Of a stretch of 64,000 nt of DNA, positions 1-61,800 are shown piece by piece. Origin of the DNA: Bugula neritina (Eukaryota > Animalia > Bryozoa); the NCBI GenBank assembly GCA_964035545.1, contig OZ037767.1, positions 7,946,581 to 8,010,580 of the forward strand, given 5' to 3'. The notes beneath the pieces were generated by a model, which worked only from the letters and a program-made list of their open reading frames with translations, searched no databases and was not told the DNA's origin. Position numbers and translations under genes: made by a program. The first letter of the stretch is position 1; each line of letters opens with the position of its first letter.

Positions 1-3000
1 TCAGCTCTCCAGACCCTCACTACTGGTGTAGATAGTCTATGTGAGTTTCTAGACCAGATAGTGAAGTTATACAGCTGACCTCCATCTAAATACACTGTAT
101 AGGATGTATTATCAGTCTCTTCAGTAGTTTCTGTGTTGTTCTTATTGTAGGTGTATGATATTGTGCCATGGCAGTTCACTCTACTAGGAGGCTAAAAATT
201 AAATGAATTAATTATTCTAAATCTCCTTATATTTGATAGATATTTACACACACTCACACACTCACACAAAATGAGAGTGCCCTTGCACCCAATTTGTCTC
301 TACAACATCAGTCACACTTCAATTGATTGATTCCTTTAGTATGTACAGTAGGTGTATACAACAATTATAGCTCATGAGTGATTTCAGTCAACTTATTACA
401 CATGCACTCCTACACAATGTTTTAGCTAGTTTTCACAATTTAGCTGCCAATTTGTATATGGACCGGCTTTTGCCTTAAACTAAAAGCATATTAACAAACA
501 CAACTAAATAGTTAAAATGTTTATTTTAGTTTCCCTTGGTTTCTTGTGTTTTTTCTGAATCATTTATTGAATAAGGATTTGTGAAGCATGATGGTTTTTT
601 TCATCACAGTTTGAAAATATATCATTAGTTCATATGACAATGACGTTGCGCTTTAATCTTGCAGCATACTTTCCCAGTTTTTGCATGCTATAATGTGCAT
701 AGTTATAATCAGCTAGCACATAAAAATGCCTCATGTATATATAGCAATTTTTATGAATTCTGAGCAAACTTCAAGTTTTGGTCCTAACTTGCTAATCTGT
801 AGCTAATAAATAAAGTTAAATTACTCTCCATAAGCAACCTGCAATTAGAAGTTTGACCTACATATGGTTTTTAGTATAACTCGGATCATAGATACATTTG
901 AATTATACAATCTATATACAAAAAACTGTTTTACATATAAAAGTACATTTTTCAAAATCTCCTTATAGGAAATATAATTTATTGTTTAGTTTTTCATTTA
1001 CATGCATATACTAATATGTGCATACACCAATACACCTATAAAATTTCGACCTATATAATATAGTCTATACTAACTCAGAAATACTGAATAAAATTTGACT
1101 CAATAATGAAAAATCAACTATTTGCAAGTGGTAAAATAATTGCGATTATGACTAGTACAAAGGGGGGTAAGCTGAAACACAACTACTATTTAAAAACTGA
1201 CAACTAAAGTTGGGTTGAATAACTACTTATAATAAGTGATGTAAAAAGTTTCTATGTAAATATTTCTATTTTTTCATCCAATATAAGAATCTCAAATGTT
1301 TATCTAAATGAATTATTTTTCAGAGGTTGCATTTAAACCTTTTGACTAAACTAAAATATAAGGACTTTTCAAGTTGAGTTATTGTAGTTTATATGAGCTA
1401 ATAGGGTCACTATAATATATGCCAGAACACCTTAATTTATATAACTTGGGTAATATAGAAACTCACATTCCATGTAATGGTGTATTTCCAAGTTTCTCTG
1501 CCCAGCTCTTCAGATTTTTCCTTGAATATATCACTTATGGATACTACATCTGGTGGGTCTGAATCTATAGAATACACATACATTTATTATTCATTATGCA
1601 TATACTACAATATAATGCTAGGAAAAAATAATGATGGATTAAAATCATCTCAATTAATAATATTGAGGTGAGGAAGAGACAACTATGCGAATTGGTTATG
1701 AAAGCACATTATTACAAATAGATTGATTATAGGTTTAATAATTTCAAAAATTATTATTTGAACTTTTATTAAGAAGTTTTTTAATGGCATGATTTTGACT
1801 GAAATAAAATCAAGATTTTTTAATTCTATCGGAGAATTGGCTGAAGTAATTTGTTCAGTCGATTCAACAATAGGTTGGAAAAAGCAGCTTCAAATTGAAA
1901 TGGTATATTTTTAGCTATAATCATAACTAGTAATGATACATGCACTCACTTGCACAACTAGTATATGCTGATCTTGTGTCTATCTGACTAGGTCCATTTT
2001 TTATCAGTACAGCCACCGTACAAGTCACATTGGTGTATGGCTGGTAGTTACATGAAGATCTAGTGAAAGATTTGTCATTCCCTGTCACAATGATCCACTC
2101 CTTGTCGGTACAATTCCACTAAAGTTTGCAAAAAATGTAAAAGAACTTAGTATTTCATACATTGTTAGAAAATATAAAGGTTCTATCGTTGAAACATTAT
2201 AAACACATAGTTTTATGTAAATATTCAAGTTAGAAAAATTACCACACAGCTTTCAAAACTATTAAACAAAATTTAATTATGTTACTAAAAATAGAAACTA
2301 CCATACCTCATATCTGGCTATGGATTCTCCTGCTACCAGTTGTGGCTGACTCCAGGTAAACTCCATGCAGTCAGAAGAAGTGTTGGTTAGTTGAGAGTTG
2401 AGGGATTTGGTTAAAGAATCTTTAAACAACAATTATAGTTGTTAGAAAAGTAACATTATACAACTTTGGTTATTCAAAAATAATAGTTGACATACACAGT
2501 TGACTAGGCAACTGCTATAAGCTGCTTACATCAGGTATTCTCACTATAGCTACTGGTTTCATATAAAAAGTAAAGAATATACAGGTTTCGAGAAACTGTT
2601 TTGGTAAAAACATTATTATAAGCTATTTTAATTGAAAAAAGAAATTAACATTCTATCTTAAATAAATACACACAATAGAAAGAAGAAAAGTCTATTTCTC
2701 ATAAGTAAGATAATAATTAACACTCATTGTTTCACCAATTATAATAATAATAATTAGTATAGTATTACTTACTTGACTCATACACCGTTACTTCTGTCAA
2801 AGAGAGAGGCTCAGTACTCTCACTGTACACAGCAACATGTCTTGCAGATATCAGTGGACTAAACTTTATGATTCTAACGGGTCCATATGCTTTACTATTG
2901 GGACCATCTCTTACTGTCCAGGTGGTAGCACTTAAAGATGGTGGACCAGGTGAATAGACATCTGATGTCAACACTGATATCTTCACAAGTCTGTAATCTT

Positions 3001-6000
3001 TAAAAAGAATATAGAGCTAGCAAAACATCCATACTGAGGAAAAGATGTCATTTCAGCATCGTCATATTATATAAGACAAATGTAATGCTTATAATACTTC
3101 TACAAGAAATAAATGGAATAATGAACTAATTGCAGTGAACAGATAATGTATCATTACTAAAAAAATTAATATTTTACTCCACCAGTCTCTCAGACTATAA
3201 CTTTCACTGGAAGTATTTTTTGGCAATGCCTACTTTTTAATTACTGAACAATTATTAAGCAATAATTTAATGCATTTCAATGATTCACATGCAAATTTGT
3301 TGCTACAACAAATAAAGCAAAAAGTAAATAATAACAATCAAGTCAGTAAAAAGCCTCAAACTATTGCTCAGTTTTACTCATATTATATATTGCCTGACCA
3401 CAACACAGGTACAGCACATGCACAAACTTTGTTAACAGCCATTCAAATGCAAATTAATTTAAGCCATCTCACTGCAAATTAGGAATAAAAAGAAATATTT
3501 TATTCAATTTTGTCACCTTCAACTTATTGTCGCTCAACTTCATGCGTATTCATTTCATTCGTTAACTATTTTATTATAACTACATTTAGTGTCCTTTTTG
3601 TAATATTTAAATGTTGAATTGCAGCAACCAAGTTACTTATAAATTTGTGCTTTTAAGCATAATTGCAGTCTTCTACTCTTTTTCAAATTTGAAGCAAATC
3701 TAGACAATTTTAAAACATTACTGCATGTATGCTTTAGTTGTTTTTAGTAATAATTGCAGAATGATTACCAAAAAATACCGCATGAATAAAACATGCGGTA
3801 ATATGTATTTTGAAATTGCTTAGACTTGTTCTAAATTTAAAAAGAAACACAAATATATAAAAAAAATGAGTAAACTTACAATACTTGGCAGCTTCTCCAG
3901 GATCTCCCAACCTGTTGTATAACTCTATTCTACCAATATGATAAGATATTCCAAGGTCTAGCCTCCACCACTTGTCTCCACTGTTACTACCTGATGAGTG
4001 AGTGAAGTCACTTACCACATCAATTATTTCATTAACTGCTAAACTTGCTGGATAAGCTATAGCAGGATTAAAATTATCCAGCTGGTGAGTATACTTCTTA
4101 TAGGCGATGTTGCAGCTTCCTAAAACGGTTATAATAATGCTAGATTAGCTAACTTTAAATGCAACCTACTATTTATTGTTTACTCATTATATATCCCCGT
4201 AAATTTTTGAATGCATGGTTATCATAAACAAAAAACATGGGCTAAATGTTCATGTTGTTTTATATTTTCCTAGTTTAATTATTTTATTATACTTCTAGTT
4301 TTTATAAAGAGTAACTGTGAGAGGCTTATGTAGACTAACTGACCATATTATAGCTGAAGTTCTATAGCCGCTGTCACTTTAACATAAATTATAAAATAGA
4401 CAATTCTGAGAAAGTGCTTGTAACAGCTGATCTACTACCCAAGATCAAAAACCCATGTAACTGAGTACATTTTGAGTAAACTAAACAAAATAACTATACT
4501 AAACGTTTATGGATAAGTGTGCATCAAACTCAAACAAGCCTATACATTATTGTTTTCAAGTTTATTGTTTAAGGGTTAAACAAATATAGGAAAATTTTAT
4601 AGTCTGCATGGCAGTCCCACCATGAGAACACTAATATAGGTGTCAATGCTATAGAAGCTATACAAAAAATGTGTCCTATAAACCCTCTATGCCAAATTTG
4701 AACATTTTAATAGCTTTTTTTATATATTAATTTAATTAATTTATCCTATGCTAACTCCAGTTCCGCCTAAATTGATTATGAAACTTTTTTTACTAATGCA
4801 AAGTTCCTTCAGCAAAAAAAGAATTATAGTTTAGATTATTATATTAAAACAAACAATAAATAAAGTTTATTGTTATACTAAAAAGAATAATCACTAATGT
4901 ATTGGTTGAGTGATAACTATTTGAATATATAGCATATAAAGAACTTTTACTTAAAATTATGCTAACCACATATTGGAAATTTTTAACTTATTAGAAGTAC
5001 CTGTATTTCCTGTTTGTATAGTCTGACTCACTTCCTGGCTAGCATCTCCTGCTACTACAGCCATTACAGTACACGTGACCTGTGTAGAGGGGGTAACTCC
5101 ACAAGCTCTTGCAAATGTTACGTCAGAAGATACACTGGCCCAGTTGTGACCACCGCATTTATGCTACAAATAAGCATACCAATAAATATAGAATAACTTT
5201 TTTAAGTATTGAACATTTGTAGTATGAAAATTTACAAAGTTTTTCTTCAATTTTTGTTGTGAACAACTAATTAGGATTACTATACAATTCAGAGGTATTG
5301 GCTGAGTGTTGCCTTGTTTTTCAGAAATAATGTTGCAAATCGGTGACTTGAGAGTTGCTTACTCTTGTTTTTATCTAGATTAATGCTCAGGAACTATCTT
5401 CATGTGTTGTAAGATATATTCCTCTCAAGTTTTGAGATATAGAAGCCAATGCTAGAATAGTTGGGCGGAAGTACTATAGAGTCATATAATTGACAGAATG
5501 AAAAAATAAAATAAACATCTAATATTAAACTTATAGTATAGAAACGATACTGTCTTATAATAGCGCAGTTGGCAGTTGGCTCTCGCAGAGGGAGGTTGTG
5601 TTTTCAATGCTCTCTGTAATGCTTTTACTGTTGACATTGTGGCGCAGTTATTGCAGCCTTTGTTTATGCTGGCTTATAATCACCCTCATTTACAAGCCAA
5701 GAGGAGTGAAAGGCCTTGAACATATTATTATGGATTATCAAGCTCTGTTGGATATTAAAAGCTCTATGACTCGACATCAGCTGAAAGATATTTGGAACAC
5801 TAACTACAAACACGCAGTAGGGGTAACGGGGGGGGGGGCACAACGGTCATAGGGGTACAAAAAGACGGCCGAATTGTGAGAGAACTTATTGACTTAGAGT
5901 TGTGATTTTTTCTCCATAAAAAGATATTGACATAATTATTTAGCCTTTGTAGTTTCAACACTTGCGGAACATACGTGTTGAAAAGGCGAGTAAAAAACTG

Positions 6001-9000
6001 TTTTTACCTACTTTTTGTAAATTTTTTAGGATGTCGTTGAAGCCTTATAACTTTTTACACTCAAAGGCAAGAAGCCTAGATTTTACTAATATTGTTGCCA
6101 TTGCTTGTCTCTACAATGCTTAACTATTATAACAGCAAACACTGAAATGAATTTTCCTTGAGGCACATTTATTTTCTATTTGGCCACACGGGGCACAATG
6201 GGCCACGCTGACCGGGGCACAATGGGCCACCTGGTTATTGCACCCTGATCACTGTTATTAGTTTCTTTGCCCAAAAATTTGGTTGAAATGTTACTAAAAT
6301 CTATAGATATAGCCATTTCTGACCTTTTTGTAAAATATCAAAGACATCATGGTAAGACTACAAAACTACAAGTTAAAGCTCTCCTAATACATACATCTGG
6401 TGAGGTTGAAGCTTTGCCATTTTATACATAATACAAAACACTCTGCTGTTGCTACTTGTAGATAGTCATGATAATCATTATATATTACACCATTGAGAGA
6501 ATATACATGCATTTGACTGAAATAAATTGTGATTTGCTAATTTGCTCCCCCCTCTCCCATCCGTACTCCAGTCACAAACCTCAGCCATGCATGCACCTTA
6601 GCTACAGTTCATTGAAACAAGTTCACTCAGAATTTTGTAGTACATTTTAGTAAAGTTTTTTTTAACAAACGTTGCTCTGAAGTAAAAATAACAAAACATT
6701 TTTAGTTTTAAACAGTAATGATAATGGCACTGCAGAACCGAATGACATGCGTTTGATTTTGCCTCCCTCTGCTATTCGTAGTGGCACAAACTGTACAGCT
6801 AAAACATGAATTTTGCTGTAGATCTGAAAGAGTATCTTTATTTATTTGTATTATTAAATAAATAAAGATTAGATATAACAAAATACGCAAAATTTCCATA
6901 TATTTGTTGTGTCCCACCCAGTGGCCCATTGTACCCCGGTACCGGGGCACAATGGGCCAATTTTTTCATCATGAAAATTTCGTTATTCTGAAAGTTGTGA
7001 AAGAGATAGAAACAACAAACTGATACCTGTAATAGACAACAGATGTAGCATTAAGAATAGAGATTATTGAACTAGTAACTTGAAAAACAGACAAATGAGA
7101 GCAACAAATGCAAAATTCGGCCCGTTGTGCCCCCGTTACCCCTAAAGGTTATTGATCCCAGACTTCTTCGATCTAGAAAGAGGGGCAAGCGTGGCGGAGT
7201 TAGAGTCAACCACAGTACTAAAACTGGTAAAGTACCACTACCTGCAGTTGTGCTCACTAATGCACAATCTGTAAGAAATAAACTCGACGAACTCCATGGT
7301 CTCCTTAAAACTAAAAGACTTAGTAACCAATCTCAGCTCATTTGTATAACAGAATCCTGGCTTACTCCAGATGTGCTACATTCAAGAACTGAGCTTGAAG
7401 GATATGAGCAGTTCCGTATGGACAGACTTCCAGATGCTAGCGGTAAAACCTGTGGAGGAGGCATTCTAGTCTATATTGACAACAAATGGTCAACAAATAA
7501 CAATCTTATATTCAACTATATGGACAATCACTGTGAAATTATGACAATTAAATCAAGACCTCACTGGCTTCCAAGAGAGTTTACTTCAATTATCACTGTT
7601 TCATGCTATACTCCCTTCACCGGTGCTTCTAGACTAAAACAAAATGCTTCATCCACAGCTAAAAAAATATCAACACATGTTAAAGAACTAGAAAAAAAGC
7701 ACCCTGATTCTTGCATTTTTGTAATGGGGGACTTTAATCAGCTTCCGATTAAACTTGATGGATACTATCAAACAGTCAAAACACCTACCCGCAACAATAA
7801 AATTCTTGATAAATGCTATATCAGAATCAAAGATGCCTTCAAACAATGCCATCAACTTGCAAAGCTTGGTGGGTCAGATCACTTTATAACACATCTCATA
7901 CCAACCTACACACCATTATCTAAATACAAACCAACTCGAGTCACCAGACTTATATATTCTGAAGAGAACTGTGAAAAGCTGAAAGCAGCATTGGACATTA
8001 CTATCTAGAGTAATCTGCTCTCTGATGATGATAACATCCATCAACAAACTGAAATTGTAACAGACTATATAAACTTCTGCACAGATATTTGCATACCCAC
8101 GAAAAGCTTCAGAACATGTACCAATCAGAAACCTTGGATTACTAAACATATTACAGAAATGATCTATCAAAAACAAGTAGCCCACAAAGAAGGAAACCGT
8201 AAACTATATAATAAGCTCAAACGTGACATCAATAGATCTATAACCAACAGCAAAGTTAATTACTCTAAGAAAATTCAACTACAATTAGTAAATCAACCAG
8301 CCAAAGCATGGACTGATATAAAGAAAATAAGTGGTCTACCACACAGCAAGACAACTACTGCTAAAGCTAACCCATTTACACCTGATGACCTAAATACCTT
8401 CTTCACCCGATATGAAAAGCCTATATCTCATCAGCCTGTTTTTGATAGAAACATTATCAGTGCACCTCCATTGGAAATATCAGAAGACGCTGTTCTCAAA
8501 CAGCTAAAGGGACTAAATTCACGAAAAGGTGCAGGTCCTGATGGTCTCATTCCGAAAGTTTTAAAAATCTGCTGCTATCAACTAGCACCTGTCTTTACAA
8601 AACTGTTTACTTTCTCCATCCAATCTAAGACAACTCCAAATTCATGGAAATCTGCAATGATCAAGCCACTTCCTAAAGTCAAAAATCCTGAACTACTTAA
8701 ACAATATCGTCCAATTGCTCTCACAAGCTGTATATGCAAAATGCTGGAAAGGCTCATCAAACACTACATTATAACTCATACACCTATGGACAAATATCAG
8801 TTCGCATATCGTACAAATCGCTCTACACAAGATGCGCTGTTATGTCTAACTACAACTGTGACAAGTTTCATTGATAAGAAAGCATCCAATTACACAAGGT
8901 GCCTCTTTCTAGACTTCTCTTCTGCATTCAATACTATATCTATTCCAGACCTCATTACGCAACTAACTCATCTTGACTCCAATGTTACTGAGTGGATTTA

Positions 9001-12000
9001 CAGCTTTCTTACAAACAGAGTACAGCGCACAGTAGTGGATGGCATAACATCAAATCCAATCATAACTAACACAGGAACTCCCCAAGGGTGCTGTTTATCT
9101 CCACTATTGTTTTCTATTTACACTAATAGGATTACCTCAAGCCAGAGCAACATCACTGTAATTAAATATGCAGATGACACTTGCATTATTGGCTGCATTG
9201 GCAAACAGTCTGATCTAAATATTTACTTTGACGAGATTAAAATAATTTCTAAGCAATGTGATGATTTAAATATATTATTAAACCCTAGCAAGACCCAAGA
9301 AATGATGTTCTCAACCCAACGTGCTAAACCTCATACCCCTACTCTCGTATTGAATGGAACAAACATTGTATTGTCTGAAAAAGTGAGATATCTTGGTGTG
9401 TTAGTGGATCAGAATTTGAGATTTCATGAACATGTACAATCAGTAGTAACAACAGCATCAAGAAGAATGTATATTGTGAAGAATTTTTCGTATCTTAGCT
9501 CTAAACCTCTAGCAAATATGCTATTCAAAAGTTTCATCATGTCCCGCATCGACTATTGTCTACCTACTATTTTTACTTGTATCTATGCCAGTGATAAAAA
9601 GGCTATTCGAAGAATTTTCAAAGATTGCTCAAAACTCGGAATTAGGTATCTAAACATTGATTTGCACATTCAGAAACTCACTAAAGAACTTGCCATCAAA
9701 TATATAACAGACAATGACCATTTCATCAATAACTTTCTTAGTCAATGCCCTTCTGGAAGATATCGAACCATCAAATATAGAGGGACATGGGGCAGAGATA
9801 GCTTCTTGCGACATCTTGTAAATACTTTAAATGAGCTTTTATTTTAAATAATCCAACAGAGTTTTGATTTTTTCTCTTATTTTTGTTCATTCCTACTTAT
9901 TATAGCCAGTATTTACACTGAATTTTGCAACGTGTTGTCATGTTTGTGATATGTAATAAATCAATCAATCAATAAAACTATTCTATCATATGAGATAAGA
10001 AGAAATTTATAAATATAAGCACCTGTTGATCAATGAATCTTTCATAGGTTAGTTCATGTAGAAAATACCAAAGATTCTTTAGTTGGACAATAAATATTAT
10101 TATAGTAATTGCAACGATGGAACTTACTTTAGAAAATGTTCATCATATACAATGAACACATATATACTTACTGTATATAATAAAATTATAAATTTGATTT
10201 ATACCATGATAACTTTGAAAGGAAATAGGTTTTTATCAGTATAGAAACACTGGTTATATACCAACTAATTTTTATATACATATATATTATAAAACGGGTT
10301 GAAAAACTTACCATATATGATTTAACGAACAATTTCCAGCTGTTTTAATTAAATGTTGAACTATAAGCCAAACTACCTTTTGACAAACTTAAATCTCACA
10401 TTTACTAAATCTTCCGTTTTTTTATACTTTTAAACTATAATTATATTACATGGCCCATATTAATTACCTCATATCTTAAAATGTTTCCATTAGTTCCTTG
10501 TAATGCTGTCCATTCCAAATCAATACAGGTGCTGCCACATGGTGAAAGAGTCAGGGTTAATGATCCATCCCATGATGCTGCCAAATATAAGATGACAGAA
10601 ATAAACACTGTTACCATAATCAAACTGTATTTATATTCAGCGAGAAGTTTTTATTAGGGCACTCAACATAACACAAAAATAACGTAAGTTTACAGTCACG
10701 TCCCTGTGAGAAACCTCTGATGGAACGGTTTTTGTTTGTTAAATTGAGCTACGGTCTTATTCAGATGGGGAACAAGAGCAATTACATGACTGGATGCTCT
10801 TTCTAACAGCCCAAATGGTCTTTGTGCGGGCTCGAATCCATGACTTCATACTTACTATAGGCAAACGCTTTAACCCCTAGACCATAACTGCTCCCACACT
10901 CAACGTAGCTGAGTAATGAGAAAACATTAAAAATGTATGTTGCAGTGTACTTTTTAAAAAAAAAATTATATTTGTTACCAGTTTGTCAATTAAATGCTAA
11001 AACCATATCAATATGATTATGTGAGTATACAAGATTCAACAAATCGATAGTGAAGCAGAATCAAGCAATTGAGAATAGCATTATTTTTAATCTGTAAAAT
11101 GGTGGCAAGGTTTCAGGCTGTTAGTGTTACGTCATATGCAAGACCTTTATCATTATATTATATTTTAATCTATTATAATAGTTCATCGACTGGGATACAT
11201 CACTGAAATGGCAATGGTTGCTTTTCAGCTGAAAATTATTTTTGCTCACTGCACAACTACTCATATAATGAGCTTTCAAGTAGAATGGAGTTGACATTCT
11301 TCAAAGGGCAGAGTTTGTTAACTTTGATAAATCTGTTTTGCTAGCAATCCAGTGTTACTAAAATTATTTACTGCAAGACATATAGATTGCAAATGACAGT
11401 ATATGGATTTGATACAATTGATCTTTTACCTGATACATAAATTTCCACTTCGGTAAGAGCCAAAGTACTGTTAGGTGTAGACCTGTATACAGCTATATAT
11501 CTGGCATATATCTGTGGGTTGAACAGTATGATACCAACTGGACCATAAGGTTCAACTTGATAGCTCTGCTCTGTCCACTGCAAGCAGTTGCGACATGGTG
11601 GAACTGAGTTTGTTGTTGATGTCAGAATAGAGATGTTTTGAAGCCTGTTATCTAAATAAAATGACAGGAGCAGTATATGATATAGTAAATTAAAAACAGG
11701 TAGCAACTAATCAAATCTTACTAAAAAGCATAGTAAAGAGTAGTAACTAGTAAGTAAATCAATTTTTATTGAATAAAGCTTATAGGCTACTGAAAATTGT
11801 TGTAATATGCTAAGATCCACCTACATAGTTGATCACAGTTTTAGAATCAAGGCAATTCAGTTTGCGTGAAATACATGTAAAATATGTATAAATTGGTCAA
11901 TACTTGTGCTGAGTGCTCTATAATCAATGCGATGCTTTTAACCCTGTAAAAAGTGTCAGGGGGTAAGAATAAGTACTACAAATATGCTTTTCAAAATTTA

Positions 12001-26100: not shown

Positions 26101-26198
26101 GTTTGTCAATAGATTGATCAGAATATTATGCAGCAATAATATAAGATTATTTACTTTTATACCTATATAAAGCTAAAACTCGTATGCTGAGTCATCAA

Positions 26199-26204
26199 TT
26201 TATT
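26199..26204 (-). terminator. Candidate polyadenylation signal (AATAAA) of gene B
   Basis: AATAAA on the minus strand about 360 nt after the stop and just before the duplicated promoter region of gene A. The AT-rich background makes chance hits common. Confidence 0.35.
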
Positions 26205-26566: not shown

Positions 26567-42043
<15,477 letters not shown>

Positions 42044-42518: not shown

Positions 42519-42520
42519 GT

Positions 42521-42727
42521 TAGGGGTTAGAGCGTTTGCCTAGTAAACACAATGTCATGATTTCAGACCCGACAAAAGCCATTTGTGATGTTTAAAAGAG
42601 CATCTATTCATAATTGCTCCTGTGCCTCATATGAATATTTCAAGTCTTTAGCCCGATTTAACACAAACCCTTCTATCAGGGGTTTTCTGACAGAGATGAT
42701 GACTATATAAACTTTGGCAAGTTTTTA
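42521..42727 (+). mobile_element. SINE copy upstream of gene B
   Basis: Colinear with 39110-39314. Confidence 0.75.
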
Positions 42728-42734
42728 GTTATCA

Positions 42735-45050: not shown

Positions 45051-46028
45051 AGAATAAGAAGCAACAAATGCCTATGATGATGAGTATCGGAAAAGTTTAT
45101 AGCATGGTTTACAGCAAGGAAGAAACATGTTTTTTCAACTATGCTATGTAGGTATATAATAAGTGCTATAATGTATTTAAAAACACTGTTACATAAGCGT
45201 TTTGAAAGACAGTTTATATAGTGAATAAATTATCTGACTAGTCAGCACAGATTTGGTATTGTAGCAGCAAAAAATACATTCTATTCTCTTTAGCATTAGA
45301 TTGAATATGCAAACATGAGAATATAACTAGTGTCACTATGTCAATTAAATTACAGGAACAACAATAATTGTGATCTCATGTATCAGCATTTCAACTTTGA
45401 ACTTCCTCTTTACTAGACTGATTAGTAGTTCTATATAGCAAGCAGTACAGACAAATAATGCATCTATTAATGCCACAGTGTCTATATATCAAAATTCAAC
45501 ACAGCCTTTTCTCTAGGATTAAATTTCTTCATATCTTTATCAAACAATAGGTGTAATTATCTATTTCACATCTCAAACATAGCAGTTCAATAATCCATTA
45601 TTTTGTGGCCTTTTCTTTAATCATAGTGTACTTGTATATGCTTGCAAACATATTATGTCCCAGTGTGAATTTTTCAATTGCAATCATTAGATTCTGCTCC
45701 ATTTTGTTCAATGACCAAAAAACTAGGCAAACTATATCAAAACATCATAACAAGCCTAAAAATGTGATGATAATTGATTATAATACAAGGTAACCTTTAA
45801 ACAGCAATTTTGTAATTCTATAAAAAAATGTTTTATGTACAGTAAAATAATTGCAAATATTTGACTGTTTTGGCATATTTACACCTTAAATTAATATACT
45901 ATTATTTTATAAAATTATCTAAATTTCTAATTTCAAATTATACACTAATTATAGTCGTATTATATAGTTATGCTAGTTATAGCTGCATCTGTTATCCTTA
46001 TTATATGATGTTATATAAACTCACAACC

Positions 46029-46182
<154 letters not shown>

Positions 46183-46634
46183 GCTGTAAGAATAACACAA
46201 GCCATGCAGAGTAACTTTTAACCCAAGTAGTATAAACATAGTTGATTCCAAAAGAAACAGCCTGCAATGGCAAATAATATTAATGCATTGGCTATATTGA
46301 ACCAGTTTACAGTGGCAAATATATAGTTGCATGAGATGTCTATTAAAAATGTCATGGGGCTTTTTATGACAAGCTTTGTATTAGAGAAACTGTGTGAACT
46401 AAGTTCTAATTAGTAGCAGGCTAGTTATTGGCTAGTAACCAGTCTAACTATTTTGGACTGCTTGATTGTAACCACATCAACATAGTTTTATCTGGGCGTA
46501 GCTTTTATACTTGAGTGGCTAGGAGGTAATAAGTTTTACAACCACAGCTATGACCTTTGTGTGATAATGCAAGTGTATGAATAGATAAGGTTATCTACCA
46601 GTGACAGGCTGTTGAAATTTGCTTACTGTCAAGA

Positions 46635-46776
46635 GGCTATTTATTTAACAGCAAGCTACAAGGAAGTATGCTTTCATAGTGTAGAGATACAGCTATGTAG
46701 CTTACAGAGTAACACAAATAAATTATCATTAGATGTGAACCAGCAGCTAACAGAGATACAGTAACTACTCATCAAC
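46635..46776 (+). promoter_or_regulatory. Gene C 5'UTR/core promoter block conserved in A, B and C
   Basis: Shared AGGAAGTA...CTATGTAGCTTACAGAGTAACAC...CAGCAGCTAACAGAGATACA...CAACATG. Confidence 0.55.
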
Positions 46777-46852
46777 ATGAAGAAAAGTCTAGTACTGAGA
46801 TTCTCTATCATTCTTTCATGGATTAGTTATCTTCACTTTGTAGAGTGTCAAG
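46777..46852 (+). CDS. Gene C exon 1, signal peptide (MKKSLVLRFSIILSWISYLHFVECQG)
   Basis: ATG at 46777, donor G|GTAAG at 46853. Peptide identical to gene A exon 1. Confidence 0.85.
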
Positions 46853-52800: not shown

Positions 52801-55800
52801 CTGAGTATATGGTATGGTATATATGTGTTATAAGTATCTTAACTCTTTGCTCTAATAAACTTGTAGTACAAATGTACTAATAAAGACTGGATAGTTCACA
52901 ATGGTAATGGAGTGCTGCCAGTAACTGTAAGTGGATATGGAAGAGAGACTGATGTTGTGTGTACAGTCATTGCTGTGGTAAACTCTGGTGAAAGTCAGCA
53001 AAGTAGTGCAGCCATTACTACTGGCAGTGCAAGTGAGTTGATAATTGTTTCCTCTATTCACCTGTTAAACTGTCATGGAAGCAAAGGATCTCTTCCTTGA
53101 TCTGTGAGAGTTTACATAGATTCACTTATCCAATGGTTTCAATTGGGCTCCAGGTTCTAATTATTTCAAAGCAGCTTATAATATGTTTATCAAACTATAT
53201 ATATATATTTTGTATAGTGTATTTATTCAATAAATACTAAGAGAGCAATAATTCAGCTAGAATCTAAAAGTAAAACTATAGTAAACTTGTTGGTCCAATT
53301 CTCTGCTGGTTCAAGTGTGATGGAATGAGTTTCAGTTTTTCAAAAAATTACAAAAGCTCTATAAGCTGTGAATAACCAAAATTAGAGTATAGTTTTACAT
53401 TTGAAATCTAATCAAAAATATTTTTTTATTTTGCTATGAAATTAAGTTAGCTGAACCCTTCCTTAGTGGCATGTAAATTCAATTAGTTCAACACTTATAG
53501 GTTTAAAAGACATTTTTTTAAAAATGGGATGTACATGTATACTTTGTATGATAAACCGTTTATATTATTACTTAAACTCTGTTTTAGGATCTGTTAACAT
53601 TGCAAGGCAAGGGAAAGCTAATCAAATTAACTCTCTAGATAACAATGAAGCATATTATGCTGCAAGCGGAAATAATGGAAACTATATTGATTTCTCACAC
53701 ACAGACTCAAATGATGGTTCCTGGTGGAGAGTGGATCTACACAGTAAATTCTTTATTGGGAGAATAGAGTTGTTTAACAGACAAGGAAGGGATTCTAATG
53801 GTCCTTACTGTTAGTATAATCTTAAGTTAAATGACTCTTGGTCTACATTTTGAAAAGCATATTTGTAGTACTTATTCTAACCCCTGGCACATTTTTCTGG
53901 GTTGAACGCATTGTATTGATTAAAACTCTCAGTGCAAATATTGATCAATTTATACACATTTTATTTGTATTTCACTCAAATTTAATTGTTTTGACAATAT
54001 AATTGTGATCAACTATGTAGGTGGAGCATAGCATATTATTATGACAATCTTTTTACCACAATTTTTTGCCATGATTTTCAATATAAATTTCATTTAATAA
54101 AAGTTGATTTACTTGCTACCACTCAGTCAGCTGCTTTTTTAAATATAATTGAATTATTTGCCACCTGTCTTTAACTTACTATATCATTTACTGTTCATGT
54201 TGTTTTATTCAGATGACAGACTAGATAACATATCTATTCTGACATCAACAACAAACTCAGTTCCACCATGTCGCAACTGTTTGCAATGGACAGAGCAGAG
54301 CTATCAAGTCGAACCTTATGGTCCAGTTGGTATCATACAGTTCAACCCACAGATATATGCCAGATATGTAGCTGTATACAGGTCTACACCTAACAGTGCT
54401 TTAGCTTTAACTGAAGTAGAAATTTATGTGTCAGGTAAAAAAATCAATTGTATTAAATCCGGTTCCTTTCATTCGTCATTTATATGTCTTGTAAATAATT
54501 TTAGTAACAATGGATTACTAGTAAAACAGATTTATCAAGGTTTCTGTTGTATACAAACTCTGTCTGTTAAAGAATGCAAACTTTATTTTACTGGAAACTT
54601 TATTATGGCTAGTTGTGCAATGAGTCAAAAAAAGACTTTTAACTGAAAAATAGTCATTATCATTTCAACAGCGTATCTCAGTTTATAAAATGATTTTAAT
54701 TTAATGAAATTATAATATAATGAACAATAAATGTCTTGCATATGATGTAACACTAGCAGTCTAAAACACTGTCACCAGTGTACAGATTATAAGACTGCTA
54801 TTTTCACTTGTGTAATTTTGCTTCATGCACTATTAATAATTGGTTTTAATTTTCATGTATATAGTCACATGATGACATTGATAGGGTTTTAATTGACAGT
54901 TTTAATTGGCAAATTGTTAACAAATATAAATAATTTAATTGAAAAATGCACTGCAACATAAGTTATTATGTTTTTTCATGACTCAACTATGTTGAGTGCC
55001 ATGATAGAAATTTCTAACTGAATATAAATATAGTTTGATTATTGTAACAGAATGTTTATTTATATAATCTTATATTTGGCAGTATCAGTTGATGGAATGA
55101 TAACACTGACTCTTTCACCATGTGGCAGCACTTGCATTAATTTGGAATGGACAGCATTACAAGGAAGTAATGGAAACCTCTTAAGATATGAGGTAATTGC
55201 TGTTGGTTATATATGTGATATAGGAGCTATACCATTAGGAACTATGTTTAAGGTTATAAGATTTAAGCTTGTCAAAAATATGGTTTTGCTAGTTAAATGG
55301 TACATAATTATGCATGCTGCAAAATATTATTAAACAAATTTCACTGAACTGCAAATTTTGTATGTGTTTTTAAATTACAAATAATTTGGTACTTAAGATG
55401 AACTCAGCTGCAAAAAAATCAGTGTTACATGCCTATAGAGTTCATTTATGTGTGTGCGAGTGTGAGTGTTATATTATATGTGAATAGTGCTGTTGATAAG
55501 TGCTACTTTCATACTGTAAGTGTAACAAAAAAGTATCTTGATTGAACCAGGCTCTAGCATTCTGACAAGGTATACCTGTTCAAGTTTCCTGATCACAGTC
55601 ATCTCCAAATCTTAATAATAGAAAAGTTACAAAACATACAAACATCATTACACACTTTTCATTCACAACTTATAATTTCTACTATAAGTGTAATCAGTAT
55701 TGTTAGAATAGCCGAATGTTAGTGTATTAGAGTGATTCTTCCATAGTGTATAAGTTTGTTAGAAAAGTTTTTGAATAAATGTAAAACTCAGCCTATAGTG

Positions 55801-58800
55801 TAGCTTAGCTAAACTAAAAAAATGTATGCTGCACTTGTCCCATCCCTATAACTTATACTATGTGTTTTTATTATTGTTTGTCAGTATAAATGCGGTGGTC
55901 ACAACTGGGCCAGTGTATCTTCTGACGTAACATTTGCAAGAGCTTGTGGAGTTACCCCCTCTACACAGGTCACATGTACTGTAATGGCTGTAGTAGCAGG
56001 AGATGCTAGTCAGGAAGTGAATCAGACTATACTAACAAGAAATACAGGTACTTCTAATTATAAATTAAAATTTTTCAATATGTGGTTCGCAGAATTCTAG
56101 GTAATTTTTCTTTTTATATGTTATATTTAAATAATTACCACTCAACCAATACATTAGTGATTATTCCTTTTAGTATACTAAGAACTTTTGTTTTTTGTTT
56201 GCTTTAATATATTAATCCAAACTATAATCTTGTTTTTAGCTGTGGGAACTTTGCATTAGTAAAAAGAATTCATAATCAATATAAATCATATAAATAAAAT
56301 TAGCATAGGATAAATAAATTAGAATAATATAGAAAAAGCTATTCAAATGTTCAAACTTGGCATACTGCCTATATAGGACATATTATTTGTTGTAGCTTCC
56401 ATAGCATTGACACTTATATTATAGTTTTAACATGATGGGTCTGACAGACTATAAAATTTGCCTATATTTTTTAAACTTTAAACAATAAATTTAAAAATAA
56501 TAATATATAGGCTTGTTTGAGTTTTATGCACACTTATCCATAAACGTTAAGTAGTCATTTTGTTTAGTTTATTTAAAATATACTCAGTTACATTGGTTTT
56601 TGGGTAGCAGATCAGCTGTTGCAAGCACTTTCTCAGAATTTTTTATTTTATAATTTATGTTAAGGTGACAGTGGCTATAGAACTTCAGCTATAATATGGT
56701 CAGTTAGTCTACATAAGCCTCTCACAGCTACTCTTTATAAAAATTCGAAGTATAATAAAATAATTAAACGAGGAAAATATAAAACTACATGAACATTTTA
56801 GCCCATTGTTTTTTATTTATGATAACCATGCATTCAAAAATTTACGGAGATAATGAATAAATAATAAATAGTAAGTTGCATTTAAAGTTAGCCAATTTAG
56901 CATTATCTTAATCATTTTAGGTAGCTGCAACATTGCCTATAAGAAGTATACCAACCAGCTGGATAATTATAATTCTGCTAATAGATTCCCAGCAAGTCTA
57001 GCAGTCAATGGAATTATTAATAATGAAAGTGATTTCACTCACACATTAAGTAGTAACAGTGGAGACAAGTGGTGGAGGCTGGACCTTGGAATATCTTATC
57101 AGATTGGAAGAATTGAGTTATACAACAGGTTGGGAGATTCTGGAAAAGCCGCCAAGCATTGTAAGTTTATTCAAATGTCTTTATATTTGTGTAGTTTTTT
57201 TTTCAAATTTGGAACAAGTCTAAGCAATTTCGAAGTATAATATATTACGGTATGTCTCATTCATGCAGTTTTTTTGTAATCATTCTGCAATGATTACTAA
57301 AAACAACTAAAGCATACATTAATATTTTAAAATTGTCTAGATTTGCTTCAAATTTGAAAAAGAGTAGAAGACTGCAATTATGCTTATAAAAGGACAAATT
57401 AATTAGTGATTTGGTTGCTGCAGTTCAACATTTAAATATTACAAAAAAGGACACTAAATGTAGTTATAACAAAATAGTTAACGAATGAAATGAATATGCA
57501 TTAAGTTGAGCGAGAATAAGTTAAAGGTGACAAAGTTGAATAAAATATTTTTTTTATTCCTAATTTGCAGTGAGATGACCTAAATTAGTTTGCATTTGAA
57601 TGGCTGTAAACAAAGTTTGTACATATGCTCTACCTGTGTTGTGGTCAGGCAATATACATAAGTCATTTTACTTAATTTAGTACACATTGGAAATCTCCAG
57701 TTTTCAGCTATTTTTTACATTTTAGCTGCTAATAAACAAAGGTTTTTGCCCAAAACTAGTAAAGTATAAATGAACATCCTAAATAATTGAAGTTCTTCTT
57801 AATTTTACTTGATTTCCCATGCATTTTTTCTATTTATTCTGCTACTTCTGATTGCAGACCATTACGGTTTTTTTTCGTAAAAGCTCGCAATCCAAGTTAC
57901 TTAAATAAATAGGAAAAACATGGGAAATCAAGCAAAATTAAGAAGAACTTTGATTATTTATATGTATTTATAAATATTTTACTGATTTTGGGCAAAAACT
58001 CATGTTCATTAGCAACTAAATTGTGAAAAATAGCTAAAAAATGGAGATTTCCAGTGTGTACTAAATTACGTAAAATGACCCATATATGAGTAAAACTGAG
58101 CATTATTTTGAGGCTTTTTACTGACTTGATTGTTATTATTTACTTTTTGCTTTATTTGCTATAGCAACAAATTTGCATGTGAATCATTGGGATGCATTAA
58201 ATTATTGCTTAGTAATTGTTCAACAATTAAAAAGTAGCCATGGCCAAAAAATACTTTTAGTGAAAATTATAGTGTGAGAGACTCATGAAGTGAAAAATTA
58301 GTTCTTTTAGTAATGATACATTATCTGTTCATTGCTATTAGTTTCGTATTTCATTTATTTTTGTAGAAGTATATTATATAAGTATTATATTTTTCTTATA
58401 TATTAAGACGATGCTGAAATAACATTTTTTCCTCAGAATGGATGTTTTGCTAGCTCTATATTCTTTTTAAAGATTACAGACTTGTGAAGATATCAGTGTT
58501 GACATCAGATGTCTATTCACCTGGTCCACCATCTTTAAGTGCTACCACCTGGACAGTAAGAGATGGTCCCAATAGTAAAGCATATGGACCCGTTAGGATC
58601 ATAGAGTTTAGTCCACAGATATCTGCAAGACATGTTGCTGTGTACAGTGAAAGTACTGAGCCTCTCTCTTTGACAGAAGTAACGGTGTATGAGTCAAGTA
58701 AGTAATACTATATTAATTATTATTATTATAATTGGTGAAACAATGTGTGTTAATTATTATCTTACTTATGAGAAATATACTTTTCTTCTTTCTATTGTGT

Positions 58801-61800
58801 GTATTTATTTAAGATAGAATGTTAATTTCTTTTTTCAATTAAAATAGCTTATGATGATAGTTTTACCAAAACAGTTTCTCGAAACCTGTAGATTCTTTAC
58901 TCTTTATATGAAACCAGTAGCTATAGTGCGAATACCTGATGTAAGCAGCTTATATAGCAGTTGCCTAGTCAACTGTGTATGACAACTATTATTTTTGAAT
59001 AATTCAAAGTTGTATAATGTTGCTTTTCTAACAACTATAATTGTTGTTTGAAGATTCTTTAACCAAATCCCTGAACTCTCAACTAACCAACACTTCCTCT
59101 GACTGTATGAATTTTACTTGGGATCAGCCACAACTGGCAGCAATAGAATCCATAGCTAGATACGAGGTATAGTAGTTTCTATTTTTAATAACATCATTAA
59201 ATTTTGTTTAATAGTTTTGAAAGCTGTGTGGTAATTTTTTCTAACTTGGTTATTTACATAAAACTATGTGTTTATGATGTTTCAACGATAGAACCTTTAT
59301 ATTTCTTAAAAATGTATAAAATACTAAGTTATTTTGCATGTTTTGCAAACTTTAGTGGAATTGTACCGACAAGGAGTGGATCATTGTGACAGGGAATAAC
59401 CAATCTTTCACTAGATTTTCATGTAACTATCAGCCATACACCAACGTGACTTGTATGGTGGCTGTACTGATAAAAAATGGAGCTAGTCAGATGGAAACAA
59501 GATCAGCATATACTAGTTGTGCAAGTGAGTGCATGTATCATTACTAGTTATAATGGCTTTTGACAAAAAGTTATCGAAACTAGTAGGACTATTTGTATAG
59601 CTGTAGTGAAAATTATGTTTTGTAGTTTTCACTACTAACTATCTTAGTTTACTTTTAGCTGTGTATATGTAGCAACATGTGGTGCGTCTTCAGTAACAAT
59701 TTGCACCCAATTGAGAAAACCAGATGCTATTTGGTTCAAACTGATGTTTGATCTTCTTTTTATAATTTGATGTATTTATTAGCTTTTGAATAATCAATTT
59801 TTCAGAATTCCAAGTCATTTTGAAACAGATACGGTAATGATACACTGCATTTATTTTTCTCGTAATAATAAATTGCAAAGGTTGAATATAATCTGTAACC
59901 TAATTGTGACTTATTATTATTCTATTATATAATTAGTAGTATCTGCTGGTGCTTACTCTCTGTAGATCCAGATCCACCAGGTGTAGTTGCTACAAGTGAT
60001 TTAGACAAGGAGAAGTCTGAAGAGTTGGGCAGAGAAACTTGGAAGTACACTATTAAATGGAATGTGAGTTTCTATCATTTCAATCTACTAATCTAACATG
60101 CTGAGTCTACTATTGGAGTTCATTTAAAAGCTTACTATTGCAAATTGAGCTCTATTTCTACAGAAGTTCAAAGCAAAATATCTCCAAAAAAGCAATTTTT
60201 TTTTTAAAATTACTAATTTAGATTTTATACTGGTTTCAAGATGTGTAGCTTAGTTTTAGCTTGAGCTTCTATTGGAGCTTAAAATCTGGGTCTGGCTTTG
60301 TGATTGAAAATTTTATTGTAAACTCATAAAACACTTAATCAACTTTGAAATTATAAAGAAATATTTTAAATTCTCTTGATTTGATCTGATTAGTTTTTAT
60401 GACTGGAATCGCAAATGCATTAGTAGTTCCAGTTAAGTACTGAAATAAGTGGTGTTCAAGTGAATGGTTATATGCTAGTTAGCAAGGAATTTGCTAAATC
60501 TATTTTATATACATGCATGTTGAGTTTTCAAGCTAAAATGTTGTGTATTAAATTTGGAATTTACAAATTGATTCTATTAAGTTACATAAATAAACCCATG
60601 CAGATTTATAAAAAGCAGTTTGTAGTCTATTGATATCATACTGATAAGATAGGTTGATGACCTTTTACAATTTTGACATTTAAACAGGTTGGTTTATGAA
60701 AACATATATATCCCCCCCCCTTCAGAGAAAAGTAAATTCAGTAATAAAGAAATGAGAAAATAAACTCTGTTCTGGAGAGAACATGTAGCAAAGGAAGTTA
60801 TTAACAAAACTCTTTAAAGAAAATTAAAAGAACTTACCCTTGTTCACGCATTGCCGTACCGTGAGCTGTAACAGGAAATGTAACATCCGGGCTGAATCGT
60901 ACCCTGGTATATGCTGCAGAGTTAATCAAGCAGTGCTTGATTTAAAAATTCACGGCTGGCTCCCATTGGGTAGAGTTGATCTGGTACTAAAATTTAAAGA
61001 ATATTTTCGCTAGTTTATTTTAATCGATTATTGTTGATTTAATTTAACTAATTCAAAATTTTTGAAAGATAAAAAATTTTTATCCGGCTTGTTTAAATTA
61101 AACTCAGCTTAAAAATTTAGCTTTCCCTAGTCACAAAAGCAGGCAAACCAAAAATTTAAAAATTATTTGGATGGCTAAAATATTTATTATTCAAATTAGT
61201 TTGTACAATTATTTTAAGGACACATATACTTGAAAAAGAGATTTTTTCTTTTAATTGCTTTTATGTAGTCAATAGCTTTTCTATCATAATTATCTTTTGA
61301 GAAGAATGTTGCGACAAATAAGTGAATAAGATTCAAAGGCCACAAGTCACCGCAGGCAAGAATTAGCCTTATTATAATTGGTCACAGCTCAATGTCATGC
61401 GTTGTAATTTTACGTCAGTGTGTGAACGCCTGTTGACAAAACGTAACAGCAGCGCCATTTTGTTTGTGCTGTTACAGCGTACTATACGGCAATTTGTAAA
61501 CAGGAAGTTAGGCATAATGAAATTTCTCCACTACTGTACCAAACTACGAAAAAAACTCTGACACTCCTATATATAACTCATGAATAAAAAAGTTTCAAAT
61601 ATGGTTGAAAAATTGAACAATTAATAATTCAAAAACTTAATGAAAGTGAAACTCCTGTAAATTATTATACCTAAACAATGTAGCAATTTTCAATATATGA
61701 ATATCCCTTTTCTGGTGCACTAATAATACATGGCTTATAGTATAATTCAAATTTAATTAAAATTGAAATATTTTCAATTTTTAGCCTCCTAGCAGAGTGA

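What the first reader, a model, noticed from the sequence alone, without database searches (positions are those of the whole stretch)
1950..59524. Gene A is a mosaic that switches between B-like and C-like introns, with switch points in or near exons
By eye, A resembles B in the promoter, intron 1, most of intron 7 and intron 8 (A 5164-5562 + 9971-10467 vs B 33514-34380; C 55193-55884 is unrelated). A resembles C in introns 2-4, 6 and 9-11 (A 2420-2772 vs C 58698-59053 is nearly identical, while B is far more diverged). A and C introns diverge again after exon 13. A single duplication tree cannot produce this. Repeated ectopic conversion or unequal crossover using conserved exons as anchors would reshuffle lectin modules between paralogs, as described for oyster bindin F-lectin repeats.
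Basis: partly seen in the sequence, partly recalled or inferred. Interest (0 to 1): 0.8.

Follow-up and report, generated by a model that had tools for sequence, protein, structure and literature searches.

The report
Patchwork lectin-receptor gene copies in Bugula
Four neighbouring copies of a lectin-type surface-receptor gene in the moss animal Bugula neritina have repeatedly swapped stretches of DNA, so each copy is a patchwork of the others. The pattern is real, but this is a common way for clustered gene families to evolve.

Summary
Gene A (minus strand, exon 1 at 25463-25388, exons 2-13 at 15269-1950) is closest to C in some introns and to B in others.

- **Fourth copy.** It is A's closest partner in the promoter, intron 1 and I8-E9-I9. 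It is C's closest partner in I3-I7 and for 8.3 kb downstream.
- **Conflicting trees.** Topology tests give incompatible trees: AC|BD in I1-I2 (others rejected, p<=0.004) and AB|CD in I4-I7 (others rejected, p<1e-49).
- **Clustering.** Site patterns cluster along the gene (p<1e-4).
- **Switch points.** Five of seven main switches lie within 20 bp of an exon (P~0.03).
- **Assembly.** It is the HiFi assembly of Bugula neritina. Shared tracts are only 85-98% identical, so a chimeric assembly is unlikely, but long reads could not be checked.

The best explanation is repeated non-allelic gene conversion or unequal exchange among four clustered receptor genes. Each encodes three F-type-lectin-like plus FN3 modules. 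This is a well-known process, so the finding is a new member of a known kind.

The parts
25388..25463 (-).
   Evidence: It is conserved in B (41968-42043), C (46777-46852) and D. The promoter block is 87.1% A-D, 79.5% A-B and 70.2% A-C.
15270..25387 (-). Gene A intron 1: D-like (86.8% over 2.5 kb, 15276-17734), B-like in blocks (72-77%), almost no match to C
1950..15269 (-). They encode three modules, each an F-type-lectin-like domain (2 exons) plus an FN3-like domain (2 exons)
   Evidence: AG/GT conserved in A, B and C; frame open over 727 codons; PF22633/PF00754 and a weak fn3 hit; F-type lectins in the PDB.
13446..15059 (-). C-like tract of A (I1, E2, I2, E3 and the start of I3): A-C 90-96%, D 71-81%, B 59-85%
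   Evidence: (AC|BD).
14740..14770 (-). 30-bp two-form patch in lectin exon E2. A and D share one form, B and C the other (9 consecutive AD|BC sites), inside an AC|BD region
11672..12805 (-). Old layer of A (I4, E5, I5). A is 68-84% to C/D while C-D is 95-98%. E5 plus ~190 bp upstream (12043-12449) leans towards B
5179..11665 (-). B-like tract of A (E6, I6, I7): A-B 85-99%, rising to 93-95% next to E8. It is interrupted around E7 (10491-10728, where B is closer to C/D) and by the LINE insertion
   Evidence: (fragment 11632..5179, p<=5e-4).
5563..9969 (+). LINE retrotransposon inserted in A intron I7, antisense to the gene. ORFs at 7079-8005 (endonuclease-like) and 8009-9844 (reverse transcriptase). 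Absent from B at this site
2302..5051 (-). D/C-like tract of A (E8 to E11): A-D 93-98% (E9 97.9%), A-C 86-98%, B at chance level in these introns
   Evidence: (fragment 5038..2316).
1..1949 (-). Downstream of E12 in A. The introns match no paralog; only two further exons (about 1455-1571 and 3-191, FN3-like) match C and D. The gene runs on left of the window to a transmembrane exon with a short tail
29733..42043 (-). Gene B: exon 1 at 42043-41968, E1-E12 from 39540-39331 to 29901-29733, frame open
46777..59524 (+). Gene C: exon 1 at 46777-46852, E1-E12 from 50831-51037 to 59356-59524, frame open. The gene continues past the right edge of the window
55193..55884 (+). C intron I7. It is unrelated to the A/B form and shared only with D. 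It is not a dispersed repeat
   Evidence: for the A/B form.
57650..58087 (.). MITE-like ~435-bp element in C intron I9, shared with D and absent from A. It marks the point where D switches from A-like to C-like

Best explanation
**The locus.** Four clustered paralogs sit within about 98 kb of Bugula neritina chromosome-scale scaffold C3. Their order is D, A, B (all minus strand), then C (plus strand, head-to-head with B). Each encodes a secreted or membrane receptor: a signal peptide, then three modules of F-type-lectin-like plus FN3 domains, then more FN3 exons. In A and B a transmembrane exon follows, and A has a short non-catalytic tail.

**The process.** The copies have repeatedly exchanged sequence by non-allelic homologous recombination. 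Most of this was gene conversion, possibly with some unequal crossing-over.

**Simplest history that fits the distances (inferred).**
- Base tree: B outside, then A, then C and D as the youngest pair. A is about 0.25 substitutions per site from C/D.
- A exchanged with C over I1-I3 (about 7% apart).
- A exchanged with B over E6-I7 (5-25% apart, graded).
- A and the C/D lineage were homogenised over I8-I11. A later A-D exchange covered I8-E9-I9 (2-7% apart) and stopped at a MITE that only C and D carry.
- There are also A-D tracts in the promoter and intron 1 and far downstream, plus short exon patches in E2 and E7.

**Role of the exons.** Many introns of B are no longer alignable with the others, so the conserved exons are the stretches where pairing can start and end. 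This puts most switch points at exon edges. It also keeps exon synonymous divergence nearly equal for all six pairs (dS 0.14-0.19).

**Shown and inferred.** The mosaic pattern, its statistical support and the gene models are shown. The mechanism, the direction of each exchange and the order of events are inferred.
For: - Gene models are intact in A, B and C.
- Segment identities and quartet counts change along the gene.
- AU tests: I1-E2-I2 supports AC|BD (others p<=0.004); I4-I5, E6-I6 and I7 support AB|CD (others p<1e-49); I8-E9-I9 favours AD|BC, with AC|BD at p=0.012.
- Site patterns cluster: 409 adjacent-same pairs against 276+-7.5 expected, and p<1e-4 also without I7. GENECONV-like fragments are significant for all six pairs at p<=5e-4.
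- In I6 all four copies align, with A-B 88%, C-D 94% and 79-81% between the pairs.
- Both forms of I7 are single-locus sequences, not transposons.
- Only these four close copies exist in the genome, so no hidden donor is needed.
- Flanks are mosaic too: A-D 86.8% over 2.5 kb upstream, C-D 89.9% over 8.3 kb downstream, then A-D 92.3% over 1.2 kb.
- Switch points sit near exons.
- Exon dS is about equal for all pairs while several B introns are at chance identity.
Against: - No direct observation of exchange: no long reads, no population data and no outgroup species, so direction and timing are unrooted inferences.
- Some tracts (8.3 kb C-D, 2.5 kb A-D) are long for conversion. They may instead reflect how the duplications arose or unequal crossovers.
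- Tract ages do not fit a strict clock. A-C in I1-I2 (6-9% apart) is slightly more diverged than C-D (4-6% apart), the supposedly youngest pair.
- The exon-anchor effect is only modestly significant (P~0.03), and the seven switch points are not fully independent.
- Alignments of near-unalignable introns add noise.
Confidence: 0.8

Rival explanations
1. The mosaic arose with the genes. A few unequal crossovers, or duplications that copied hybrid templates, created chimeric genes when the copies formed. There would then be little or no later gene conversion.
For: D, A and B are direct tandem copies, the usual substrate for unequal crossing-over. Some shared tracts are long: C-D 8.3 kb downstream and A-D 2.5 kb upstream.
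Against: There are at least seven switch points, and tracts range from about 2-5% to about 16% divergence. Some patches are short and flanked on both sides by another relationship: 30 bp in E2, about 240 bp at E7, and the B-like tract of A. C is inverted relative to A and D, so a crossover with C would invert the interval rather than make a patch.
Confidence: 0.13
2. One duplication tree holds throughout. Local intron turnover (transposon insertions, deletions, replacement of C's intron) and uneven rates only imitate a mosaic.
For: The introns are full of lineage-specific insertions: a LINE in A I7, a MITE in C/D I9, and SINE-like high-copy pieces in A I2 and I6. With only A, B and C, 'C unrelated in I7' could be a replacement specific to C.
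Against: With D added, four-taxon topologies conflict significantly. In I6 all four align well and pair as (A,B) and (C,D). In I1-I2, A-C is 91-94% with D at 78-79%, whereas in I4-I7 C-D is 94-96% with A at 78-81%. Neutral intron rates cannot reverse like this. Both I7 forms are unique sequences.
Confidence: 0.04
3. Assembly artefact. Reads from similar tandem copies or from the two haplotypes were joined into chimeric genes.
For: Tandem paralogs are a classic source of misassembly.
Against: - The assembly size is identical to tzBugNeri2.1 (216,009,554 bp). That assembly was built with hifiasm from 132x PacBio HiFi at QV 53.7.
- The 104 kb examined contain no N.
- Copies differ by 2-25% everywhere, well within what HiFi resolves.
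- The B-like patch of A is only 85-95% like B, so B is not its source, and no other copy exists in the genome.
- A patch needs two misjoins.
- All A, B and C frames and splice sites are intact.
- One run's 697-bp contig matches A 12121-12817 with no difference, across the minor switch at 12449. That run may be from the assembly's own sample, so it is not independent support.
Confidence: 0.03

Closest known systems
Interlocus (ectopic) gene conversion and concerted or mosaic evolution of tandem gene families, for example globin, MHC/KIR and CYP21A2/CYP21A1P (established knowledge, not tested here)
   Same: Clustered paralogs. The tree conflicts between neighbouring segments. Patches are flanked on both sides. 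Tracts have different ages. Exons are kept more alike than introns. One probably disabled copy (D) is among the partners.
   Different: The exchange here is inferred from a single genome with no outgroup or population data. The family (F-type-lectin-like plus FN3 receptors) and the phylum (Bryozoa) did not turn up in this context in my limited paper searches.
Oyster (Crassostrea gigas) sperm bindin F-lectin repeats (review PMC5712786)
   Same: Repeated F-type lectin domains, each split by an intron in the middle. Recombination helps create new lectin-domain combinations. A reverse-transcriptase element sits in or beside the gene. Many repeats lack the canonical His-Arg-Arg triad.
   Different: Bindin is described as a single-copy gene diversified by recombination within the gene, positive selection and alternative splicing of one to five repeats. 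Here four separate paralogs exchange, the repeat number is fixed at three, each lectin domain alternates with FN3, overall dN/dS is 0.4-0.5, and splicing was not examined.
F-type lectins FBP32 (3cqo), Anguilla agglutinin (1k12) and the pneumococcal fucolectin-related protein (2j1r)
   Same: The N-terminal half-domain exon aligns without gaps across the His...WWRxDL...NR core (E=7e-9 to FBP32). The Pfam hit PF22633 is above its cut-off.
   Different: The fucose motif HX24RXDX4(R/K) is incomplete and the calcium motif is not evident. The domains sit in a large FN3-containing membrane receptor rather than a small soluble lectin.

Membership tests
Interlocus gene conversion / recombinant mosaic paralogs | Significantly incongruent phylogenies in adjacent segments of the same genes | tested here: met
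   AU tests: AC|BD in I1-I2 (others p<=0.004); AB|CD in I4-I7 (others p<1e-49); AD|BC favoured in I8-I9.
Interlocus gene conversion / recombinant mosaic paralogs | Site patterns cluster along the sequence more than expected by chance | tested here: met
   permutation p<1e-4, also when I7 is excluded. Maximal shared fragments for all six pairs at p<=5e-4.
Interlocus gene conversion / recombinant mosaic paralogs | Patches bounded on both sides (conversion) rather than one switch per gene (single crossover) | tested here: met
   The B-like tract of A (11665-5179) is flanked by C/D-like sequence. There is a 30-bp patch in E2 and an island at E7.
Interlocus gene conversion / recombinant mosaic paralogs | Donor and acceptor lie physically close in the same genome | tested here: met
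   D, A, B and C lie within about 98 kb of one scaffold. The genome holds no other close copy.
Interlocus gene conversion / recombinant mosaic paralogs | Direct evidence of exchange: polymorphic tracts, spanning long reads or a rooted direction | not testable with these tools
   Only short contigs of three runs were available. There are no relatives' genomes and no population data.
F-type lectin domain (FTLD) | Sequence similarity to solved F-type lectin domains | tested here: met
   The E5-encoded piece hits FBP32 3cqo (E=7e-9), 2j1r (5e-4) and 1k12 (0.035). PF22633 scores 29.9 bits against a cut-off of 27.8. Only the N-terminal half could be searched, because the domain is split over two exons.
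F-type lectin domain (FTLD) | Fucose-binding motif HX24RXDX4(R/K) (PMC5712786) | tested here: not met
   Read directly from the translations. Modules 2 and 3 keep the His and the first Arg (module 2 with FBP32's spacing, module 3 two residues longer), but NRQGENSEG and NRLGDPGEA lack the Asp at +2 and the basic residue at +7. Module 1 has no His.
F-type lectin domain (FTLD) | Calcium-binding motif h2DGx | tested here: inconclusive
   No clear match by eye (GNNGN or NEIID at the aligned place). No structure was modelled.
Oyster-bindin-type lectin diversification | An intron in the middle of each F-lectin domain that serves as a recombination site | tested here: inconclusive
   A phase-1 intron splits every lectin domain (E1|E2, E5|E6, E9|E10). 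Switches occur at the I5/E6 boundary and at E5. Other switches lie at FN3 exons such as E8 and E4.
Oyster-bindin-type lectin diversification | Positive selection on the lectin repeats | tested here: inconclusive
   Pairwise NG86 dN/dS is 0.40-0.50 overall. A few short segments exceed 1, based on few changes. No site-level test was run.

The most novel reading that the evidence does not exclude
The D-A-B-C cluster could be a diversity-generating recognition locus of a colonial animal, for glycan-based self/non-self, symbiont or pathogen recognition. In this reading, patchwork conversion shuffles discrete alternative forms of lectin surface patches between receptor genes. Examples are the two-form 30-bp patch in E2 and the whole half-domain exons E5 and E9. 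One donor would be D, which carries a premature stop. This would resemble pseudogene-templated diversification in vertebrate immune genes. The receptors' short tyrosine-containing tails would pass on the signal.
Probability: 0.1. Interest if true: 0.65.

Novelty: new member of a known kind. Interest (0 to 1): 0.33.

Why it matters
- **Clean example.** It is a statistically well-supported case of reticulate evolution in a tandem receptor family from Bryozoa, a phylum with very little molecular genetics.
- **Warning for tree-building.** Trees of this F-lectin/FN3 receptor family built from whole genes will mislead. Orthology calls and duplication dating in the cluster must be made segment by segment.
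- **Lead for recognition biology.** If exchange shuffles binding-surface variants, the cluster is a candidate recognition locus in a colonial animal, but that is not shown here.
- **General significance.** The process itself is textbook biology.

Tried and rejected
- **Three-copy analysis.** It cannot give a topology, because an unrooted three-taxon tree has only one shape. 'C unrelated' could then have been a C-only replacement. I searched the genome for further copies and found D.
- **Read-level check.** Only contigs of at most about 700 bp were laid on the stretch, and at 90% likeness contigs of the paralogs are laid on it too. The variant tables could not be interpreted, and no spanning evidence was obtained beyond one perfect 697-bp contig.
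- **Selection.** Pairwise dN/dS gave no clear sign of positive selection.
- **Microsatellites.** There are none inside the gene bodies, unlike oyster bindin.
- **Spurious hit.** The E6-encoded piece hit only a designed Kelch-repeat protein in the PDB, with a score summed over repeats. I disregarded it.
- **Weak matches.** Pfam on the FN3 and C-terminal lectin half-exons gave nothing or very little, as expected for half-domains.
- Spliced sequences were built only inside local scripts, for the frame check and dN/dS. Whole-domain searches, whole-protein homology searches and structure prediction were therefore not done.


Full report
**What is there.**
- A self-comparison of the window shows three long homologous regions: A at about 1-17.7 kb, B at 29.7-41 kb co-linear with A, and C at 47.4-62 kb inverted.
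- Translating the conserved blocks shows the coding strand is minus for A and B and plus for C.
- Twelve shared exons (E1-E12) have conserved AG/GT sites in all three genes. The frame is open over 2181 nt, or 2178 nt in C.
- A further upstream exon encodes the start codon and signal peptide and ends in phase 1, matching E1. It lies at A 25463-25388, B 42043-41968 and C 46777-46852.
- The 12 exons encode three modules. Each module has two exons for a lectin-like domain split by a phase-1 intron, and two exons for an FN3-like domain split by a phase-0 intron. All module borders are phase 1.
- The N-terminal lectin half-exons hit Pfam PF22633/PF00754 and solved F-type lectins: FBP32 3cqo at E=7e-9, 2j1r and 1k12.
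- The fucose motif HX24RXDX4(R/K) quoted in PMC5712786 is incomplete in all three modules, by direct reading.
- Left of the window, gene A continues with more FN3-like exons, a transmembrane exon and a short tail with no catalytic domain.

**The genome.** G000 has 216,009,554 bases. This is exactly the size given for Bugula neritina tzBugNeri2.1, which was assembled with hifiasm from 132x PacBio HiFi at QV 53.7 (PMC11480708).

**Checking the observation.** I aligned the genes segment by segment with exons as anchors and counted informative sites.

|---|---|---|
| I1 (intron 2) | 90.6% | 79% |
| I2 (intron 3) | 93.7% | 73% |
| I3 (intron 4) | ~91% | 65% |
| I5 (intron 6) | 78-79% | 62-63% |
| I6 (intron 7) | 79.5% | 88.2% |
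| I7 (intron 8) | 56% (chance level) | 85.4% |
| I8 (intron 9) | 87.5% | chance level |
| I9 (intron 10) | 89-91% | chance level |
| I10 (intron 11) | 96.0% | 55% |

- The promoter block is 79.5% A-B against 70.2% A-C.
- Intron 1 shares 72-77% blocks with B and only one 135-bp block with C.
- After E12, A and C match only at exons.
- All explicit coordinates and all numbered statements in the finding hold.

**A fourth copy changes the picture.**
- A whole-genome DNA search found one further close paralog, D, just left of the window at window coordinates about -7,900 to below -30,000, on the minus strand.
- No other close copy exists in the genome. More distant F-lectin-exon genes lie scattered over C3 between 7.1 and 8.1 Mb.
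- D has all 12 exons. It carries a 3-bp insertion that creates an in-frame TAG in E9, and a 1-bp deletion after the conserved start codon. The assembled D copy is therefore probably disabled.
- Four-way alignments show who is closest to whom along the gene:
  - Promoter and intron 1: A-D 87%.
  - I1-I2: A-C 91-94%, with D only 78-79% to either.
  - I3: A, C and D are all 91-92%.
  - I4-I5: C-D 96%, with A at 76-78% and B lower.
  - E6-I7: A-B 85-95% and C-D 94%. The two pairs are 79-81% apart in I6 and unalignable in I7.
  - I8-E9-I9: A-D 93-98% and A-C 86-89%.
  - E10-I10: A, C and D are all 95-98%.
  - Downstream: C-D 89.9% over 8.3 kb, then A-D 92.3% over 1.2 kb.
- Both forms of I7 are unique to their pair and are not dispersed repeats.

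**Statistics.**
- With four sequences, unrooted topologies can be tested. I1-E2-I2 supports AC|BD: AB|CD is rejected at p-AU 5e-6 and AD|BC at 0.004.
- I4-E5-I5, E6-I6 and I7 each support AB|CD, with the alternatives rejected at p-AU<1e-49. I8-E9-I9 favours AD|BC, with AC|BD at p=0.012.
- The order of the 504 quartet-informative sites is strongly clustered. There are 409 adjacent-same pairs against 276+-7.5 under permutation (p<1e-4). The result holds without I7.
- A GENECONV-like scan gives significant maximal shared fragments for every pair at p<=5e-4: A-B 11632..5179, A-C 14566..13078, A-D 5038..2316 and C-D 12788..11638.
- A single duplication tree is rejected.

**Switch points.**
- Cumulative-difference plots place the main switches at A coordinates as follows:
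  - 13446: in I3, 107 bp from E3.
  - about 12806: 22 bp from E4.
  - 12449: in I4, 189 bp from E5.
  - 12043: inside E5.
  - 11660-11671: 9-20 bp before E6.
  - 5179-5051: at or inside E8.
  - 3337: in I9, at the edge of the MITE shared by C and D.
  - 2302: 5 bp from E11.
- Taking seven major switches, five lie within 20 bp of an exon, while 29% of A's aligned positions do. The binomial P is 0.026. This gives modest support for exons as anchors.
- There is a mechanistic reason. Several B introns are at chance identity with the other copies (52-62% in I8-I10) while the flanking exons are 88-95% identical. Pairing can therefore only start and stop in or near exons.
- Exon synonymous divergence is nearly the same for all six pairs (0.14-0.19), as expected if exons are homogenised more often than introns.
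- Exons are themselves mosaic. E5 shows AB|CD at 20 sites to 0 to 0. E9 shows AD|BC at 12 sites. E2 carries a 30-bp patch with two discrete forms, A/D against B/C, followed by an AC|BD stretch.

**Mechanism.**
- The best explanation is repeated non-allelic exchange among the four copies, mostly gene conversion.
- A history that fits the distances starts from a base tree B,(A,(C,D)), with A about 0.25 from C/D. At least five later exchanges of different ages follow, with tract divergence from about 2-5% up to about 16%.
- C is inverted relative to A and D, so patches shared with C are conversions rather than crossovers.
- The long C-D and A-D flanking tracts may instead reflect the duplication history or unequal crossovers.
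- Direction and order are inferred, because there is no outgroup.

**Artefact check.**
The only runs offered were contigs of at most a few hundred bases on this stretch.
- Indirect arguments against a chimeric assembly:
  - The assembly is HiFi-based.
  - There is no N in the 104 kb examined.
  - Shared tracts are 85-98% identical, never near 100%.
  - The B-like patch of A has no other possible source in the genome.
  - A, B and C all keep open frames and splice sites.
  - One 697-bp contig of run X1 matches A 12121-12817 without a difference. That run may come from the assembly's own sample.

**Comparison with known systems.**
- The pattern is that of interlocus gene conversion in tandem families, which is established knowledge.
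- The oyster-bindin parallel holds for the mid-domain intron and the role of recombination (PMC5712786). It fails on paralogs against a single-copy gene and on fixed against variable repeat number. Positive selection is not evident here (overall dN/dS 0.4-0.5).

**Rule compliance.** Searches with gene products were made exon by exon, by reference. The joined (spliced) model was built only inside local scripts, for the frame check and dN/dS. 

**Verdict.** The main addition is that a fourth copy outside the window is a principal partner, and that all four genes are mosaics, not A alone. This is an ordinary process in a new family and phylum, so interest is moderate to low.

Noticed in passing
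L032:1689-1931 (D exon E9; window coordinates -18312..-18070) and window coordinates -7956..-7882 (D exon 1): Paralog D has a 3-bp insertion that makes an in-frame TAG in E9, and a 1-bp deletion just after the conserved start codon (an internal ATG could still give a signal peptide). D is probably a pseudogene or null allele. Even so, it is A's closest partner in E9 (97.9%).
   Followed up: partly
window:5563-9969: A 4.4-kb LINE with long open endonuclease-like and reverse-transcriptase ORFs lies antisense in A's intron I7. Its first ~1.3 kb (5821-7133) recurs at 90% in B's intron I8 (31766-33078), and similar pieces lie left of the window (about -8,750 to -10,360). A 5'-only fragment is unusual for a LINE.
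   Followed up: partly
window:57650-58087: A ~435-bp MITE-like element matches itself on both strands. More than 80 matches at 80-87% identity were listed across the genome. It lies in intron I9 of C and D but not A, and a partial relative lies in B's I3 (37005-37300).
   Followed up: partly
window:10695-11056 and window:13772-14133: Two A-specific insertions in introns I6 and I2 have very high word depth in all three public runs. Loose-end consensus beside the I6 insertion (places 10858-10861) resembles a tRNA-type box (GGTTCGAACCC), so they are probably SINE-like repeats.
   Followed up: no
window:21345-23425: A 798-bp inverted repeat, 99.4% identical (21345-22142 against 23425-22628), lies in A's 10-kb first intron. 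It is probably a young transposon with long terminal inverted repeats, or a hairpin duplication. A 198-bp part recurs at about 40993-41186, in the first intron of B.
   Followed up: no
window:17551-17679 (also C 47362-47495, and D at window coordinates -10388..-10533): A ~130-bp block inside intron 1 is conserved in A, C and D. It contains ATGCTGGTCTCCAATA followed by GTGAGT, a 16-nt open stretch ending in phase 1. It could be an alternative first exon without a signal peptide, or a regulatory element.
   Followed up: no
window:41195-41352 and window:46030-46180: Two long pure microsatellites: (TA)79 in B's first intron, about 600 bp downstream of its exon 1, and (AC)75 about 600 bp upstream of C's exon 1, in the head-to-head B-C intergenic region.
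   Followed up: no
L033 (window coordinates -4668..-4333): An exon of gene A left of the window, probably its last, encodes a transmembrane helix and a ~90-residue tail. The tail has three tyrosine motifs (PIYMNK, VSYEVM, HVYARI) and no catalytic domain. B has a homologous exon at about 26793-26929.
   Followed up: no
G000:C3:7.12-8.12 Mb and one site on C6: At least ten more exons encoding the C-terminal half of this lectin-like domain (33-40% identity) lie scattered over about 1 Mb around the window. The four-gene cluster therefore sits in a larger F-lectin-type gene neighbourhood.
   Followed up: no
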